Positions 14,579 through 56,015 of a stretch of 64,000 nucleotides of DNA are shown here, piece after piece. The notes beneath the pieces are model-generated. The model was given only the letters and a program-made list of their open reading frames with translations. It ran no database searches and had not been told where the DNA came from. Positions within the stretch are counted from its first letter, which is position 1. Each line of letters starts with the position of its first letter. The stretch lies in the IMG/VR virus record IMGVR_UViG_3300020195_000009, positions 222,006-286,005 of that record; one strand, written 5' to 3'. A program made the position numbers and the translations under genes.

Positions 14579-15694
14579 ATGAAGAAAAGGGACATCCAGG
14601 CGAAGGCTACGATCAAGGTCGGACGAGACGGAAGCGTTTCCGTCTCGTCACCGGATGTCGTTGACCCCCGCGTGCTCATGAAGCTCGGGATGACCGAGAT
14701 GTCCCGGCGTAAGTTCGCTCAGGTCGCCCCCAAGGCTTTCGGGTTCACCCCCGACGTAGCGGACAAGGACGACCTCATGCGGCTCGGGGAGGTTCTCCGA
14801 AAGGAGACCTACCAGCACGGTGGGGATGAGGTTGCCGCCCCGAAGCTTCTTGAATGGGCGAAAGCTCAGGGTGAAGACTTCATGGATTTGTTCCAGGTTG
14901 AACAGAACGCGATCGTCTACTTCGCCGCCGCCCGGTGGGCCGATCAAGCCTTCCCCGTCGTGACGATGGGAGAACGGTTCTGCGCTGCCCTCATGGCAAC
15001 GAAGATCCCGGAGGAGATGCTCGAAGAGATCGAGGCCCCCTGGCATGCGTTCATGATCGAAGTCCCCGGCAACATGCTGAGTGTCTTCGACCCGGACTCC
15101 ATGCGCCGGACAAGCATCGTCCGGATCTTCGTTCACAAGACGATCGATGTCGATGAGCCGTGGCGCTGGGTCGCGATGGGTAAAGATGGCCAGCACGTCT
15201 GGCGCATGGGGTCCTCTTTGAACCTCGTCACTCCAGTCCAATTCCGGAAGCGCGAGACGGTCCCTTACGAGGTCAACAGCGACGACTGGGAAAACGACCT
15301 TCACCGGGACGAGCGGCTCTACGTTCTCGTAGGTCGCCTCATCCTCAACGCCTGTTTGGTCCTTGCCGACCCAGATCAAGTGAAGCCGCTGGGGTCAAGC
15401 CACAAGCGCCACGAGGCCAACAAGGCCCGCCGACCCGGCCCCCCGGAGCAACGCGTTTTCCAGATCGGTCGACCCATCAACCTGGATTGCCGGGATGCCA
15501 TCCGGGAATACGTAGAGGGGGAGCGCTCTGGACACGAGTTGAAAATTCAGGCGCTCATCCGAGGCTACTGGCGCCGGCAACCCTACGGGCCGAAACTCGC
15601 CTTCCGCCGTAGGCAGTGGATTCAACCCTATTGGAGAGGCCCCGAAGACGCCCCCATTCTCATTCGCCCTCACATGATCCCAGAGGACACATGA
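14579..15694 (+). CDS. phage protein with C-terminal RG(H/Y)WR..PYWRGP motif
   Basis: IRGYWRRQPYGP..WIQPYWRGP. Confidence 0.6.
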   Translation: MKKRDIQAKATIKVGRDGSVSVSSPDVVDPRVLMKLGMTEMSRRKFAQVAPKAFGFTPDVADKDDLMRLGEVLRKETYQHGGDEVAAPKLLEWAKAQGEDFMDLFQVEQNAIVYFAAARWADQAFPVVTMGERFCAALMATKIPEEMLEEIEAPWHAFMIEVPGNMLSVFDPDSMRRTSIVRIFVHKTIDVDEPWRWVAMGKDGQHVWRMGSSLNLVTPVQFRKRETVPYEVNSDDWENDLHRDERLYVLVGRLILNACLVLADPDQVKPLGSSHKRHEANKARRPGPPEQRVFQIGRPINLDCRDAIREYVEGERSGHELKIQALIRGYWRRQPYGPKLAFRRRQWIQPYWRGPEDAPILIRPHMIPEDT

Positions 15695-17649: not shown

Positions 17650-17880
17650 GATACGCTCGAACCTGGTCTTGTAGGGCTCGGGTGGGGGTGGCACAAAGTA
17701 GACGTAACCTCGACGGGGGCCGCCATTCGGCTCTCGTGCGACAGCTCCAGTGTTGTTGAAGGCGCACAAGGTCGAAGCGACCGATGAGGTCTTGGCTTGA
17801 AGAGCGTGTGATATTTCCGTAGCGCTCTTGCCAGGGTTCCCCCGGACGTAGTTCAAGATCCTGTCTTTGAGCATCTCCAT
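17431..17880 (-). CDS. winged-helix protein carrying KTRFERI; tail runs antisense into the ARH gene
   Basis: ILNYVRGNPGKSATEIS..GYVYF wHTH-like pattern; ATG abuts the tRNA 3' end. Confidence 0.55.
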   Translation of the reverse strand: MEMLKDRILNYVRGNPGKSATEISHALQAKTSSVASTLCAFNNTGAVAREPNGGPRRGYVYFVPPPPEPYKTRFERILAEPDGAASRAASDLQLKPVEVVEVLQTLPPSDGDSIQPVVGSRKRPRNGGRRVSVSASPNRGLNRLLKGLG

Positions 17881-17957
17881 GGTGGTCCCGACGGGATTTG
17901 AACCCGCACCCCGCGAATTTAGAATTCGCTGCTTCAAACCATTTGAGCTTCAGGACC
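17880..17957 (-). tRNA. amber suppressor tRNA (anticodon CUA)
   Basis: Acceptor GGTCCTG/CGGGACC, anticodon arm GCGAA-TT[CTA]AA-TTCGC, T arm GCGGG-TTCAAAT-CCCGT, ends ACCA; atypical A8 and D arm. Confidence 0.8.
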
Positions 17958-19070: not shown

Positions 19071-19103
19071 ACAGATTCTCCACAGCCTGTGGATAGAACG
19101 GGG

Positions 19104-19176
19104 CGCTCCCGGCAGGACTTGAACCTGCGACGTACGGATTTAGAAACCGATGTTCTGCCGACTGAACTACGGGAGC
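19104..19176 (-). tRNA. amber suppressor tRNA (anticodon CUA)
   Basis: GCTCCCG/CGGGAGC acceptor, GTTC/GAAC D stem, loop TT[CTA]AA at canonical spacing (anticodon stem has two T-T mismatches), T arm GCAGG-TTCAAGT-CCTGC, G73, no encoded CCA. Confidence 0.8.
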
Positions 19177-19182
19177 ACACAT

Positions 19183-33652: not shown

Positions 33653-33982
33653 TGCCTCGCCAACGACGCCGTAGGGAGCCCGAGCCGGCTCCCGTAAACC
33701 CGGCCCTTGAGGTCCTTCTGGACCGCCGTGAGAAGCTGGAAGAGCAGCTCAGTGAGCTGGACGAGGAGCAGATGTGGACGGTCCTCCGGCTCGTCACCGA
33801 GAACCGGGACAAGATCCTGGAGTACCCCAAGAGTTTTCTCTTGGGCGCTGTGTTCACGGAGGACGACCTAACCCTCGGGGTCCACTCCTGCGAGAGCCCA
33901 ATCGGGATCTGCGTCTACGACGATATCAACGATCCCACCCACGACCACTGCCTCTTCTGCGGCGATCCTCGCGAAAGAAAGT

Positions 33983-34018
33983 AGTTGAATACTTAACCCT
34001 CTCGGGTGTCCCTTCAAC
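33983..34018 (+). promoter_or_regulatory. class I promoter, leaderless
   Basis: AGTTGAATA-N14-GTGTC-N8-ATG(34019). Confidence 0.75.
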
Positions 34019-34668
34019 ATGAAGACCCTCACCATCCTCAGCCAGCTCGACAAGATCGCCGCAGCGGACCTTCGTACGGCACTTAAGGACAAATACTCCG
34101 TCATCGGCAACACAAAGCGGGGCACGCTCACGCTGTCCTACTCCGAGGGCACGTACACGCTCTCGACCTTCAGTCACAACCCTGTCTGCATCGCCCAGGG
34201 CACCCCGGCCGTCGTTCGACCCATCCTCGCTTCCCTGTATGCTTGCGCCCGATGAGCCAGCGCAAGTACAGCATCGTGTGCCCCGTCGGCCTCCAGGCGT
34301 TTGGTGAGGATGGGCACCCCAAGTACAACGAGAACCACTATTCGTGATGTCCAACGTGGGTGTGTACATCACCAAGGAAGAGTATGCCCAGCAGGAGCGT
34401 GACTGTGAGGCTCGGGGAGCTTGCTCTGACGACCTCGGGGAGTACCCCATCGGCTCAGACTGCACCAAGAAGCTAAAAGCGGCTGGCGTCCCGGTTTACA
34501 CGAGGGGATCGTGAACCTCCACGAGCGTATCGCTAAGGCTCTAGGTTGGTCCGTCCAGGATACCCAGAGCTGCTCGCTGCCAACCTTGCGAGAACTCGTA
34601 CGGCCCGTCTCCCCGTCCCTCGCCTACGAAATCAGCCAAGTCATTCAGTCGGGCTCTCGTCTCTTTTT

Positions 34669-35210: not shown

Positions 35211-35245
35211 GGTTGATTCCCAACCCCCTCCCGTGTTCTTCCAAC
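35211..35245 (+). promoter_or_regulatory. class I promoter, leaderless; supplies upstream stop
   Basis: GGTTGATTC-N13-GTGTT-N8-ATG(35246). Confidence 0.8.
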
Positions 35246-35551
35246 ATGAGCAACGTAGTCGCAAACACCATCGTCTCGCAGATCGGCCGCTCTACGGGCC
35301 GCATGGCCTCGATGATCGGAGCCTACAACTTCATCGCCGGGGCCTACGCCCTGACGTTCAGGTTCAAGGCTCGGGCCAAGAACGCAGCCAACTGCGTTCG
35401 CATCACCCTCGGGGCCTCGGATACCTACCGGGTCGAGTTCATCAGTGTTCGGGGTGTGAAGGTCAACACGAAGGGCGACTTCTCCGACGTGTACGCTGAG
35501 GACCTCAAGCCCCTCTTCGAGCGTGAGACCGGCCTTTACCTTTCGCCCTGA
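35246..35551 (+). CDS. conserved phage hypothetical protein
   Basis: VANTIVSQIG..MIGA..D.Y.EDL..LFE.ETGL pattern; leaderless. Confidence 0.65.
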   Translation: MSNVVANTIVSQIGRSTGRMASMIGAYNFIAGAYALTFRFKARAKNAANCVRITLGASDTYRVEFISVRGVKVNTKGDFSDVYAEDLKPLFERETGLYLSP

Positions 35552-35752
35552 AGCCAATGACTACCTGCAACGCGGATCTCGATCACCCGTGCGATGCCGG
35601 CCCAGACGAGTCCCCGTGCTCGGCTTGTCGGGCAGAGCACACCTACTGGCAGGCTCAATGGAAGGTGGCCTCCCCCGAAGAGAAGAACCCGGCTCAGTAC
35701 GCTCAAGACCTTCGGGATGCCGGGAGAGGTCATCTACTCCCCGAGTGACCAA

Positions 35753-35866
35753 CTTCGAGGCAGAGTGCAGCGGCCCGCCACAAAGCGGGACGAGGGTAAA
35801 GCGGTCCGGCCGGACGCCCCCTCAGTGTGAGGTGCAAGCCCTCACCCCTTGCACTCTGCCCCGAAG
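35753..35866 (+). ncRNA. tRNA-like cloverleaf RNA with extended closing stem
   Basis: CTTCG-A-GGCAGAGTGCA/TGCACTCTGCC-C-CGAAG; three internal hairpins, the last GTGAGG-TGCAAGC-CCTCAC (T-arm-like). Confidence 0.6.
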
Positions 35867-35877
35867 ATGTCGATTTA

Positions 35878-35913
35878 GGTTGAATCTCAAACACCCTTCC
35901 GTGTTGACGGTCA
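35878..35913 (+). promoter_or_regulatory. class I promoter, leadered
   Basis: GGTTGAATC-N14-GTGTT-N8-A..AGGAG..ATG(35939). Confidence 0.7.
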
Positions 35914-36621
35914 AGAAGGCCGTTCAGGAGTCCGTGTCATGAAACCCATCAACCTGACCCAGAAGGAAATCCAGCGAGCTTGTGACGGCCTCACCGTCGT
36001 GGTTCGCCTCCAGGCTTCGACCAACCTCTACATGGTCGCAGCCGTCAACGTTCAGACCGGCCTTCCGGTCTTCAAGCCGAGCATGGTCTCCAAGAGCGAG
36101 ATTCACAAGGCTGTCAGGACTGAGCTTCGGATGGCCTCCAAGTGTGGGATGGGCGGCTCGATGGCCGACGCATCCCGCTTTCGTGAGGTCTCGTGAGTCC
36201 TCGAATCCAAGCAGTTACGGATTTTCTCCGTTGGCTCGATGACAACGAGAAGCCGGTTGCTCTATGCAATACGGACGACTACGACCGCCCATTCGCCAAC
36301 AACATCGAGGCTCTCCTGGCAGAATGGGAGAAAAGTGAACATCATGCCCATCCCCATTCATCGCGAAGACCCTGAAGATCCCCCGGTGGAGCGTTGCTGC
36401 TTCTGCCGTAACGTGACGCCCTTCTGGACGTCACTGTCGGACCGCAAGGGTGGGCAACAGGTAGCTTGCTGCGAGCACTGTGCAGGCCGGGGTGACCCGG
36501 TTGACGTTCCGACAAAGGACCAGTGGTGCCGGAGGGAGAGGATTGCGCATCGGCCGACCATCGGGGAAATCTCCCAGGGTCGTGACCGAAACTACCCTCC
36601 CCCTCCCATCACGAACCGTCC

Positions 36622-37131
36622 CTAGTTGGCGTTGGCGAACGCGTGGGTCGACTTCCCGCTCATCGACTTCCCGTTGGTGACCTTGGGGGGAAGAAGGGTC
36701 CAAACCATTTGGCCCTTCTTCCCTGACTTGGATCGGACCAAGCCAGCCTTCCCGAGCTTGACGAGCATGGGAGCGAGACCCTGAGCCCCACGGAGCCCGA
36801 TGCTCTTGGCGATCTCTCTGGCAAGCATCCCCTCAGAACCCTCCAGGGCACCAAGGACTCGACTCTGACGCTCCTCGGGGGTCATCTTGGACAACTTGGT
36901 CTTGCGCCCTGGCTTGCCCGCCTTGGGCTTGAGGGAGAGCTTCTCGACGAGCTTCTGACCCTGGGGTGAGACGGCTTGGATGAGCGTCCCAGAAGCCACC
37001 GTGGTCATGAGTCGGGAGACTTGCAGGATGTCTGTCTCGCTCATGCTTGGGTGTTGGGCTCGGATCTGGAACAAGAGCCTCCCAAGGTGAAGGAACTGGT
37101 TGATGGCCTCTTTGTCCTGATCTGTCTTCAT
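36622..37131 (-). CDS. protein with C-terminal winged-helix domain
   Basis: VLGAL..GMLAREIA..L.KL.KAGLV..VWTL. Confidence 0.55.
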   Translation of the reverse strand: MKTDQDKEAINQFLHLGRLLFQIRAQHPSMSETDILQVSRLMTTVASGTLIQAVSPQGQKLVEKLSLKPKAGKPGRKTKLSKMTPEERQSRVLGALEGSEGMLAREIAKSIGLRGAQGLAPMLVKLGKAGLVRSKSGKKGQMVWTLLPPKVTNGKSMSGKSTHAFANAN

Positions 37132-55052: not shown

Positions 55053-55087
55053 AGTTGAATCCCGAGCGTCTCAGGTGTTCCTGAAAC
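55053..55087 (+). promoter_or_regulatory. class I promoter firing into the 158-nt element
   Basis: AGTTGAATC-N13-GTGTT-N8-GAAGCGGA(55088). Confidence 0.75.
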
Positions 55088-55245
55088 GAAGCGGACGGTA
55101 GGAAAGCTCTCAGAGAGGCTTGACCGGACGGAGTAGGGACGCTTCGGGGAGATCCGTCCGGGACGCCGGATTCTGAACGGATCTCCCCGAAGCCCGGACT
55201 ACTTCGTCTGGGTCTCTCCCGTTTCGGGAGGGGGCCATCCGCTTC
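55088..55245. ncRNA. 158-nt highly paired four-way-junction element, predicted sense and antisense RNAs
   Basis: Terminal IR GAAGCGGA(C/T)GG; perfect 17-bp helix 55141-57/55177-93; 13-bp helix 55124-36/55199-211. Confidence 0.75.
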
Positions 55246-55280
55246 TTCTGGTAAACACAGAGCTTCGCTCGGAATCAACC
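55246..55280 (-). promoter_or_regulatory. class I promoter firing into the same element from the other end
   Basis: GGTTGATTC-N13-GTGTT-N8-GAAGCGGA(55245). Confidence 0.75.
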
Positions 55281-55434
55281 CAGAAATGAGAGAAATTCGA
55301 GCGTAGCGAGCCTGCCCCAAAGGGTGCCCTTCCTGTAGGGCGCGAAGCTCGAAAACCTCTCATTTCCAGGGCCTTTCCCACGTGGTAGCTAGGCAACCGA
55401 AAACGTGACTTTTCGGATCTAGTGCCCAAAAAGG

Positions 55435-55469
55435 GGTTGAATCCGAGCGTCCTCGGGTGTTCCTAGATC
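55435..55469 (+). promoter_or_regulatory. class I promoter, leaderless
   Basis: GGTTGAATC-N13-GTGTT-N8-ATG(55470). Confidence 0.75.
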
Positions 55470-55550
55470 ATGAGCAAGACCCGATTCGACCGGATTCTGG
55501 CCCTCATCGGGCTACCGCCCCAGAACCTCCGAACCAAGGAGGGGCGTAGG
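55470..55550 (+). CDS. 26-aa microprotein MSKTRFDRILAPHRATAPEPPNQGGA
   Basis: ATG at +1 of a class I promoter; carries the shared motif; below the ORF-track cutoff. Confidence 0.55.
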
Positions 55551-56015
55551 CTCAAGGCGTGGTCCGTTCCGCAAGGCCTTCCTGGCCATCAAGATCGCTG
55601 ACGCCTACGACGCTGCCATGGTTGCCCTCGGGGACGACCGACGAGCCTGGCGGGGCTCCAACTGAGAGCCAGAAATGAGAGGTTTCCGTTGAACCGTGGG
55701 TCTCTTTTGAGGTACCCCAAATTATCTTCTCTCTTCGGAAAGAAATCAGTTGAAACAAGAGGCCGGCGAAGACAAAGCTGTCTGCCTCTACGCCCGTGTG
55801 GAACATGACCTACGAGACCCTCGACGCCCTCCTTGACGAAGGGACCAAGAGCGCCAACGTCATCTCCATCTTCCGCAACGTAAAGAAGGCGGCCTGAGCG
55901 CCAAGGCCCAGGTGAGGCTGGCGAAGCTCCGAGAAGGCTGGGCCTCTTGAGAGACAGAAGAGCCGGGCCTCCTCACGGGGGGTCCGGCTCTTCTGTCTCA
56001 ACGCAGGCTCGGAGC

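What the first reader, a model, noticed from the sequence alone, without database searches (positions are those of the whole stretch)
35753..35866. tRNA-like cloverleaf with 16-bp closing stem and no anticodon loop
Seen: intergenic four-way junction with arms CCCGC/GCGGG, GAGGG..GTCC-GGCC-GGAC..CCCTC and a T-arm-like GTGAGG-TGCAAGC-CCTCAC, with no CCA. Inference: a tRNA mimic, such as an anticodon-nuclease decoy, processing signal or Ro60 ligand.
Basis: partly seen in the sequence, partly recalled or inferred. Interest (0 to 1): 0.6.

Follow-up and report, generated by a model that had tools for sequence, protein, structure and literature searches.

The report
Conserved four-way-junction element, huge phage
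A 114-base stretch between two small-gene units of an uncultivated huge phage folds into a four-armed structure that is kept in three related phages, but it is not a tRNA mimic and most likely marks and protects the end of the upstream transcript.

Summary
The structure is real. It ranks 23rd of 4,398 windows in the 286-kb phage contig. It is single-copy and intergenic.

I recovered three homologues from other metagenomes. All keep the fold, with four compensatory pair changes: three in the closing helix and one in the T-arm-like arm. The inner arms are the best-conserved stretch of the neighbourhood.

The tRNA-mimic reading fails every test I could run:
- ARAGORN and Rfam are silent.
- There is no similarity to the phage's own 47 tRNAs.
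- The D-arm-position loop has no G, there is no 7-nt anticodon loop and no CCA.
- The held part of the genome has no Ro60 gene.

The context is more informative. The upstream gene differs between lineages. The element always sits 3-12 nt in front of a copy of a phage-specific promoter-like motif whose copies mostly run straight into an ATG.

My best reading is a structured RNA at a transcription-unit boundary, closed by a 19-24-bp helix, acting as a barrier, processing site or stabiliser (confidence 0.4). It has no U-tract, so it is not a canonical terminator. Strand and expression remain untested.

The parts
35753..35773 (+). 5' strand of the closing helix (5 bp, A.C mismatch at 35758, 12 bp, C.C mismatch at 35771, 2 bp)
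   Evidence: Fold. There are three compensatory pair changes among the four homologues, and the two mismatches become G-C or C-G pairs in L014 and L037.
35774..35789 (+). Arm 1: 5-bp stem CCCGC/GCGGG with a 6-nt loop
   Evidence: The stem is invariant except for the loss of its first pair in L037. The loop varies in sequence and length.
35792..35823 (+). Arm 2: 5-bp stem, A-rich 4x1 internal loop, 6-bp hairpin with one bulged G, GGCC tetraloop
   Evidence: There is no covariation. L037 has one A.A mismatch and one deleted base. The GGCC loop is invariant.
35827..35845 (+). Arm 3: 6-bp stem with a 7-nt loop that fits the generic T-loop pattern U-G-N-R-A
   Evidence: L037 shows one compensatory change (U-A to C-G) and one G-C to G.U change.
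35846..35866 (+). 3' strand of the closing helix
   Evidence: (inverted repeat I3).
35557..35748 (+). Upstream 63-aa ORF (P0002); its TGA stop ends 4 nt before the helix
   Evidence: The protein is 90% identical in L011 and L014. The nucleotide identity is only 89% and 84%.
35879..35905 (+). Copy of the phage promoter-like motif (GTTGAAT, 15 nt, GTGTT) directly behind the element
   Evidence: 22 copies in the contig, 17 followed by ATG 8-10 nt after GTGTT. The motif is kept behind the element in L011, L014 and L037.
35906..35907 (.). Junction of a 133-nt deletion that removed a 53-aa gene present in the relatives
   Evidence: read laying joint and the alignment.
35939..36196 (+). Downstream 85-aa gene (P0001) with an AGGAG ribosome-binding site at 35926-35930

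Best explanation
The element is a conserved, single-copy structured RNA. It is made as the 3' tail of the upstream early-type operon, which here runs from the promoter motif at 35212 through the 101-aa gene and the 63-aa gene to the element.

Its 19-24-bp closing helix and compact three-hairpin head sit at the boundary with the next transcription unit. I propose that the structure defines and protects the 3' end of the upstream transcript. It would do this by blocking 3'-to-5' exonucleases, by stalling or releasing the polymerase, by being cut in its long helix by a double-strand-specific RNase of the RNase III type, or by a combination of these. In doing so it would also shield the promoter that starts 3-12 nt behind it from read-through.

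Shown: the fold, its conservation, covariation in two helices, and its fixed position in front of the promoter motif.

Inferred: that it is transcribed on the + strand, and that it acts as a barrier or cleavage site. The near-invariance of the inner arms suggests that they also bind a factor.
For: - The fold is strongly stable in all four variants.
- 97% of pair cells are standard pairs, and four pairs show compensatory changes. The covariation score is 0.131 against 0.079 for shuffles (1 of 500 reach it) and at most 0.079 when the partners are slid.
- Against L037, paired columns differ less than unpaired ones: 14 of 84 against 10 of 32.
- Element identity to L011 and L014 is 98.2% and 93.9%, and the inner arms are 98.6% and 95.9% identical. 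The upstream ORF is 89.1% and 83.8% identical, and the spacer behind the element 90.9% and 70.5%.
- The upstream context differs in each lineage. In the window and L011 the element lies 4 nt after the stop of the 63-aa ORF. In L014 it abuts the stop of an unrelated 75-aa gene. In L037 it follows another gene and an 85-nt spacer. The promoter-like motif and the 53/51-aa gene always follow directly.
- All flanking genes are on the + strand.
- The helix reaches 24 uninterrupted pairs in L037, which is long enough for RNase III-type enzymes (the enzyme requirement is from general knowledge).
- Relatives that lack this element carry other long-helix structures at similar gene boundaries.
Against: - No U-tract follows the helix on either strand in any variant, and the terminator scan does not call it. 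Canonical hairpin-plus-U terminators do exist elsewhere in this phage, for example upstream of 55054.
- 20 of the other 21 promoter copies have weaker structure upstream (z -3.3 to +1.6), so such a barrier is not a general need.
- A terminator or stabiliser does not need sequence-invariant inner arms.
- The - strand folds more stably (-76.9 against -65.9 kcal/mol). Wobble and mismatch counts do not settle the strand: two sites favour each.
- No RNA data exist. All four sequencing runs found are DNA.
- No RNase III gene is present in the part of the phage held, and the host is unknown.
Confidence: 0.4

Rival explanations
1. The element is a stable small RNA in its own right. It would be released from the 3' UTR by cuts at the base of the long helix and would act in trans by binding a protein, as Y RNA, 6S RNA, adenovirus VA RNA or phi29 pRNA do.
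For: - The inner arms, the two junction linkers, the GGCC loop and the T-loop-like loop are more conserved than the neighbouring coding sequence.
- The element survived a change of upstream gene and, in the window, the loss of the downstream 53-aa gene.
- A long terminal helix with a compact head is the usual shape of protein-binding small RNAs (general knowledge).
Against: - There is no promoter motif of its own upstream.
- There are no expression data.
- It is confined to one narrow clade. It is absent from the 375-kb and 485-kb relatives and from all collections scanned.
- No partner gene has been identified.
Confidence: 0.2
2. The element acts at the DNA level. It could be a recombination or cassette-boundary site, or an operator-like site that regulates the adjacent promoter.
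For: - The locus is a hot spot for gene gain and loss. L014 has an extra promoter plus a 75-aa gene, and the window has a 133-nt deletion.
- The L014 junction without the element keeps the last bases of the element (CCCGAA) in front of its promoter copy, as an excision or recombination remnant would.
- A 12-bp perfect palindrome sits at the tip of arm 2.
- Both strands fold.
Against: - Compensatory changes in arm 3 and the closing helix preserve pairing rather than sequence.
- The 12-bp palindrome is not kept in L037.
- It is single-copy, so it is not a repeated recombination site.
- The neighbouring proteins match no recombinase or any other Pfam or PHROGs function.
Confidence: 0.15
3. The element is a tRNA mimic: a decoy for tRNA-targeting defence nucleases, an RNase P/Z processing signal or a Ro60 ligand.
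For: - It has cloverleaf topology, with arm 3 joined to the closing helix without a linker, as a T arm is.
- The 7-nt loop fits U-G-N-R-A in all variants.
- The phage invests heavily in tRNA biology, with 47 tRNA genes and an RtcB ligase.
Against: - ARAGORN and Rfam are negative.
- There is no similarity to the phage's tRNAs.
- There is no anticodon loop, no G in the D-position loop and no CCA, and the closing helix is 19-24 bp.
- No Ro60 and no CCA-adding enzyme is found in the held genome.
Confidence: 0.05
4. The functional RNA is the - strand. It could be a barrier against antisense transcription coming from the convergent - strand gene block that ends at 36622.
For: - The - strand fold is more stable in three of four variants, including the window at -76.9 against -65.9.
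- Two + strand A.C mismatches are G.U pairs on the - strand.
Against: - All neighbouring genes within 750 nt are on the + strand.
- Two other sites are G.U on the + strand and C.A on the - strand.
- The - strand has no promoter motif nearby and no U-tract.
Confidence: 0.1

Closest known systems
RNase III processing sites between early genes of phage T7 and of Bacillus phage SP82 (from general knowledge; not tested here)
   Same: Both are structured elements between cistrons in a promoter-dense early region. Both have a double-stranded helix of about two turns. After cleavage, the hairpin left behind stabilises the upstream mRNA.
   Different: T7 sites are single irregular hairpins of about 60 nt. 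This element has a four-way junction with three conserved inner hairpins. Cleavage has not been shown. The held part of the phage has no RNase III gene, and the host enzyme is unknown.
Intrinsic (Rho-independent) terminators
   Same: It is a GC-rich stable structure just after a stop codon and in front of the next promoter.
   Different: No U-tract follows it on either strand. It is far larger and branched, and it is conserved in sequence and not only in pairing.
Bacterial Y RNA / YrlA, the tRNA-like Ro60 ligand (Rfam families; from general knowledge)
   Same: Both have a long helix formed by the two ends and a branched head with a T-arm-like hairpin. The phage also carries RtcB, which is linked with rsr-yrlA in some bacteria.
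   Different: There is no Rfam match at E<=10. There is no canonical GUUCGAAUC-type T-loop and no D-loop G residues. No TROVE/Ro60 gene is in the 286 kb held.
REP/BIME-type extragenic palindromes that stabilise upstream mRNA
   Same: Both are post-gene palindromic structures that could block 3' exonucleases.
   Different: REP elements are short and highly repeated. This element is single-copy and branched.

Membership tests
tRNA / tRNA-like (Rfam RF00005, ARAGORN) | Scores as a tRNA with covariance or heuristic detectors | tested here: not met
   ARAGORN finds only the two tRNA(CUA) genes at 17880-17957 and 19101-19177. Rfam gives no tRNA hit at gathering score or at E<=10.
tRNA / tRNA-like | 7-bp acceptor stem with a 3' single-stranded end or CCA, and a 7-nt anticodon loop | tested here: not met
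   The closing helix has 19-24 pairs and there is no CCA. The middle arm ends in a GGCC tetraloop.
tRNA / tRNA-like | D-loop G residues and a T-loop able to form the elbow | tested here: not met
   The arm 1 loop has no G in three of the four variants and a single G, with no GG pair, in L037. The C56-equivalent position varies between C and A. Only the generic U-G-N-R-A pattern is kept.
tRNA / tRNA-like | Descent from a tRNA gene of the phage | tested here: not met
   The best BLAST word against the 47 phage tRNAs is 10 nt at E 0.25.
Y RNA / YrlA (Ro60 ligand) | Match to the Rfam Y RNA / YrlA models | tested here: not met
   No match at E<=10 in 35500-36100.
Y RNA / YrlA (Ro60 ligand) | A Ro60 (TROVE) gene in the same genome | tested here: not met
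   PF05731 is absent from the 286-kb record, while the controls ring. The record is about 60% complete, so absence is not proven.
Intrinsic terminator | GC-rich hairpin directly followed by a U-tract | tested here: not met
   The structure is present, but no U-run follows it in any of the four variants. The terminator scan does not call it.
RNase III processing site | Double-stranded helix of about 20 bp or more in an intercistronic position | tested here: met
   The helix has 19 pairs with two 1x1 mismatches in the window, 22 pairs in L014 and 24 uninterrupted pairs in L037. It lies between transcription units.
RNase III processing site | Cleavage by RNase III | not testable with these tools
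   There are no RNA reads. No phage RNase III gene was found, and the host is unknown.
REP/MITE-type repeated palindromes | Many copies per genome | tested here: not met
   BLAST and two covariance models find one copy in the 286-kb contig.
Retron msr-msd | Adjacent reverse transcriptase gene | tested here: not met
   The neighbours are 53-169-aa proteins with no match above the Pfam cut-offs.

The most novel reading that the evidence does not exclude
The element is released as a stable RNA of about 120 nt. Its long helix and T-loop-containing head would bind and sequester a host protein that senses or cuts structured RNA or tRNA. That would make it a phage-encoded RNA decoy of a new family, in a phage that also carries 47 tRNAs and an RtcB repair ligase.
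Probability: 0.1. Interest if true: 0.75.

Novelty: new variant of a known kind. Interest (0 to 1): 0.35.

Why it matters
Huge phages from environmental metagenomes are almost unexplored at the RNA level. This is a small, well-delimited structured element with early covariation support. It sits at a defined place in a promoter-dense block of small early-type genes. It is therefore a tractable entry point for asking how such phages partition transcription units or make stable RNAs. If it is only a boundary structure, it is ordinary. If the conserved head binds a factor, it would be a new phage RNA family. The promoter-like motif found beside it is itself useful for annotating this clade, because it marks true gene starts.

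Tried and rejected
**Searches for more copies that found nothing**
- megablast and blastn of the locus against 50,697 GenBank phages.
- Five exact or degenerate patterns in IMG/VR, JGI metagenome contigs and GTDB genomes. The known homologues L011 and L014 were not returned, so these blanks say little about close kin.
- Covariance models R1 and R2 found no second copy in the own genome. They found none in five related IMG/VR records, including a complete 375-kb phage, and none in LR745208.1 (485 kb).
- More distant syntenic relatives also lack it: L002-L008, L015-L018, L024-L025 and L030-L036. In L015 and L016 the syntenic gap holds a small ORF instead.

**A weak match not counted as a member**
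- R1 scores 19 bits (E 0.035) at L019-L023 3910-4011. This is a long-helix hairpin after a 63-aa gene. The upstream proteins are unrelated. I treat it as analogous, not homologous.

**Readings rejected**
- Coding. The substitutions show no three-base periodicity, gene callers place no gene there, and the coding score is low.
- Integron attC-like cassette site. The GTTGAAT behind the element fits GTTRRRY, but it is simply the promoter motif, half of whose copies read GTTGATT. Other gene junctions have no palindrome.
- Retron, ribozyme or riboswitch families. There is no Rfam hit and no reverse transcriptase.
- Amber recoding, despite the two tRNA(CUA) genes. TAG ends 29 of 135 well-scoring ORFs, with no clear coding signal beyond it. 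I named no alternative genetic code.

**Other**
- The first whole-genome fold scan timed out. I repeated it at a coarser step.
- One literature search gave no comparable element.

Full report
**Where the window lies.** The window is the last 64 kb of a 286,005-bp IMG/VR virus record that CheckV rates about 60% complete. The source is a microbial-mat metagenome, and GC content is about 58%. The contig carries 47 tRNA genes: 45 in one array outside the window and two tRNA(CUA) inside it. It also carries an RtcB ligase. By the 101-aa neighbour protein, the nearest GenBank relative is LR745208.1, an uncultured 485-kb phage, at 46% identity. So this is an uncultivated huge phage with an unknown host.

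**The observation.**
- RNAfold gives the four-way junction as both the minimum-free-energy and the centroid structure. The + strand folds at -65.9 kcal/mol (z -5.8) and the - strand at -76.9 (z -6.5), and none of 200 dinucleotide shuffles does as well.
- The closing stem is 19 pairs interrupted by an A.C and a C.C mismatch, rather than 16 clean pairs.
- In a GC-adjusted scan of the whole contig, the element ranks 23rd of 4,398 windows. The scan grid was set so that one window starts at the element, which favours it slightly.
- It is single-copy.
- It is intergenic. It lies 4 nt after the stop of a 63-aa ORF, and the next gene starts at 35939 behind an AGGAG site.

**Homologues.** Public phage, viral, metagenome and genome collections gave nothing by DNA search. 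Laying Logan contigs on the locus showed a variant of about 95% identity in a sediment run. That variant had no differences over 35707-35796, against 19 in the upstream ORF. I then recovered contigs through exact look-ups of neighbouring proteins:
- L011/L012, with the element 98.2% identical.
- L013/L014, with the element 93.9% identical.
- L037, a 620-nt contig with a clearly more divergent copy (95 bits with model R1).

All of them fold the same way.

**Conservation of the structure.** On the model-guided alignment of the four sequences:
- 97% of pair cells are standard pairs.
- Four pairs carry compensatory changes, three in the closing helix and one in arm 3.
- Both mismatches in the window's closing helix become Watson-Crick pairs in L014 or L037.
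- The covariation score is 0.131, against 0.079 for shuffles (1 of 500 reach it) and at most 0.079 for slid partners.

There are caveats. There are only four sequences, three of them close, and the alignment was fitted to the model. Arms 1 and 2 show no covariation, and each has one disruptive change in L037. Against L037, unpaired columns change about twice as often as paired ones. The inner arms are the most conserved stretch of the neighbourhood. The element is therefore a real, selected structure. Pairing is supported for the closing helix and arm 3. For arms 1 and 2 only sequence conservation is shown.

**Is it a tRNA mimic?** Every test I could run is negative.
- ARAGORN and Rfam are silent, even at E<=10 on 600 bases.
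- There is no similarity to the phage's own tRNAs, which have canonical T-loops.
- The loop in the D position offers no conserved G for an elbow, the middle arm ends in a tetraloop, there is no CCA, and the helix formed by the two ends is three times too long.
- No Ro60/TROVE gene and no CCA-adding enzyme occur in the part of the genome held.
- What remains is cloverleaf topology and a 7-nt loop that fits the generic T-loop pattern U-G-N-R-A in all four variants. That is a weak, post-hoc resemblance.

**Context.** While comparing L014 with the window I found a repeated motif: GTTGA[A/T]T, 13-16 nt, then GTGTT.
- It has 22 copies in the contig, almost all within contig 214-277 kb and mostly on the + strand. 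In 17 copies an ATG with no Shine-Dalgarno sequence follows 8-10 nt after GTGTT, and one more has it 17 nt after.
- It predicts the start that gene callers chose for the 101-aa gene (35246). It behaves like a phage-specific promoter for leaderless mRNAs. This is an inference, and no consensus sigma-70 promoter is found here.
- One copy begins at 35879, 12 nt behind the element.
- In all four lineages the element is followed at 3-12 nt by this motif and, except in the window, by a 53/51-aa basic cysteine-containing protein. The window has lost that gene through a 133-nt deletion.
- The upstream side differs in each lineage. It is the 63-aa ORF in the window and L011. It is an extra promoter copy plus an unrelated 75-aa gene in L014, whose stop codon abuts the helix. 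It is another gene plus an 85-nt spacer in L037.
- The L014 junction that lacks the element still carries its last bases in front of the promoter copy. This hints at recombination between cassette-like units.

**Mechanism.** The fixed position is at the end of one unit and directly in front of the next promoter. That fits a boundary element made as the 3' tail of the upstream transcript: a barrier to polymerase or to exonucleases, or a double-strand-RNase site in a helix of 19-24 pairs. T7 and SP82 early regions use RNase III sites in this way (general knowledge).

Several points count against a plain terminator:
- No variant has a U-tract on either strand.
- Canonical hairpin-plus-U terminators do exist elsewhere in this phage.
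- 20 of the other 21 promoter copies have weaker structure upstream (z -3.3 to +1.6).
- The inner arms are conserved in sequence beyond what a barrier needs, so a bound factor or a stand-alone RNA role remains open.

The strand is not settled. The - strand folds better, and wobble and mismatch evidence is split two sites to two. The + strand assignment rests on gene orientation alone. No RNA run holds the locus. The neighbouring proteins have no recognisable function.

**Verdict.** The tRNA-mimic, decoy and Ro60 readings are not supported, while a processing or boundary role is plausible but untested. It matches no Rfam family and is confined to one narrow clade of huge phages. I rate it a new variant of a known kind, the intercistronic structured element in a phage early region. 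Interest is moderate to low (0.35). There is about a 10% chance that it is a new protein-binding phage RNA.

Noticed in passing
window 9598-55436 (22 copies in the contig, e.g. 33055, 34670, 35212, 35879, 46092, 49696): A phage-specific promoter-like motif: GTTGA[A/T]T, 13-16 nt, then GTGTT. In 17 of 22 copies an ATG without a Shine-Dalgarno sequence follows 8-10 nt after GTGTT. This suggests leaderless mRNAs and marks true gene starts. The motif is present in the close relatives L011 and L014 and absent from the more distant ones.
   Followed up: partly
window 55054-56010: The two most stable 130-nt windows of the whole contig lie here (z -5.5 and -4.8). Three promoter-motif copies (55054 +, 55279 -, and 10506 + elsewhere) are followed not by ATG but by GAAGC.... 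These may be unannotated small RNA genes. Rfam gives only sub-threshold hairpin matches.
   Followed up: partly
window 17880-17957 and 19101-19177 (- strand); contig 186973-203829: There are two tRNA genes with a CUA (amber-reading) anticodon in the window. A 45-gene tRNA array and an RtcB RNA ligase (contig 181803-183065) lie outside it. A quick test gave no clear sign that TAG is recoded.
   Followed up: partly
window 35906/35907: A 133-nt deletion relative to L011, L014 and L037 removed a 53-aa basic, cysteine-containing protein gene. The promoter motif now feeds the 85-aa gene through a normal ribosome-binding site.
   Followed up: yes
L014:1556-1822: This relative has an extra cassette between the 63-aa ORF homologue and the element: a second promoter copy plus a 75-aa gene. 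The empty junction keeps the last bases of the element. This suggests shuffling of promoter-gene-structure units.
   Followed up: partly
L019:3413-3500, L019:3910-4011, L030:950-1120: More distant relatives carry other, non-homologous intergenic structures closed by helices of roughly 18-30 bp at gene boundaries (z -4.1 to -6.2). Long-helix boundary structures may be a recurring habit of this phage group.
   Followed up: partly
window 15094-15214: A second four-way-junction-like fold with an 18-bp closing stem (z -3.8) lies inside a well-scoring 371-aa ORF (14579-15694). It was not examined for conservation.
   Followed up: no
window 35825-35896 in run X3 (freshwater metagenome): A 151-nt contig matches only arm 3, the 3' half of the closing helix and the promoter start, with 4 differences. 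Its other 79 nt do not fit. It may be a fifth, rearranged or divergent variant that I could not retrieve.
   Followed up: no
window 33957-34064: An 18-nt inverted repeat (83% complementary) brackets an intergenic promoter-like copy (AGTTGAAT ... GTGTC ... ATG) and the start of the 78-aa gene. It folds with z -3.4.
   Followed up: no
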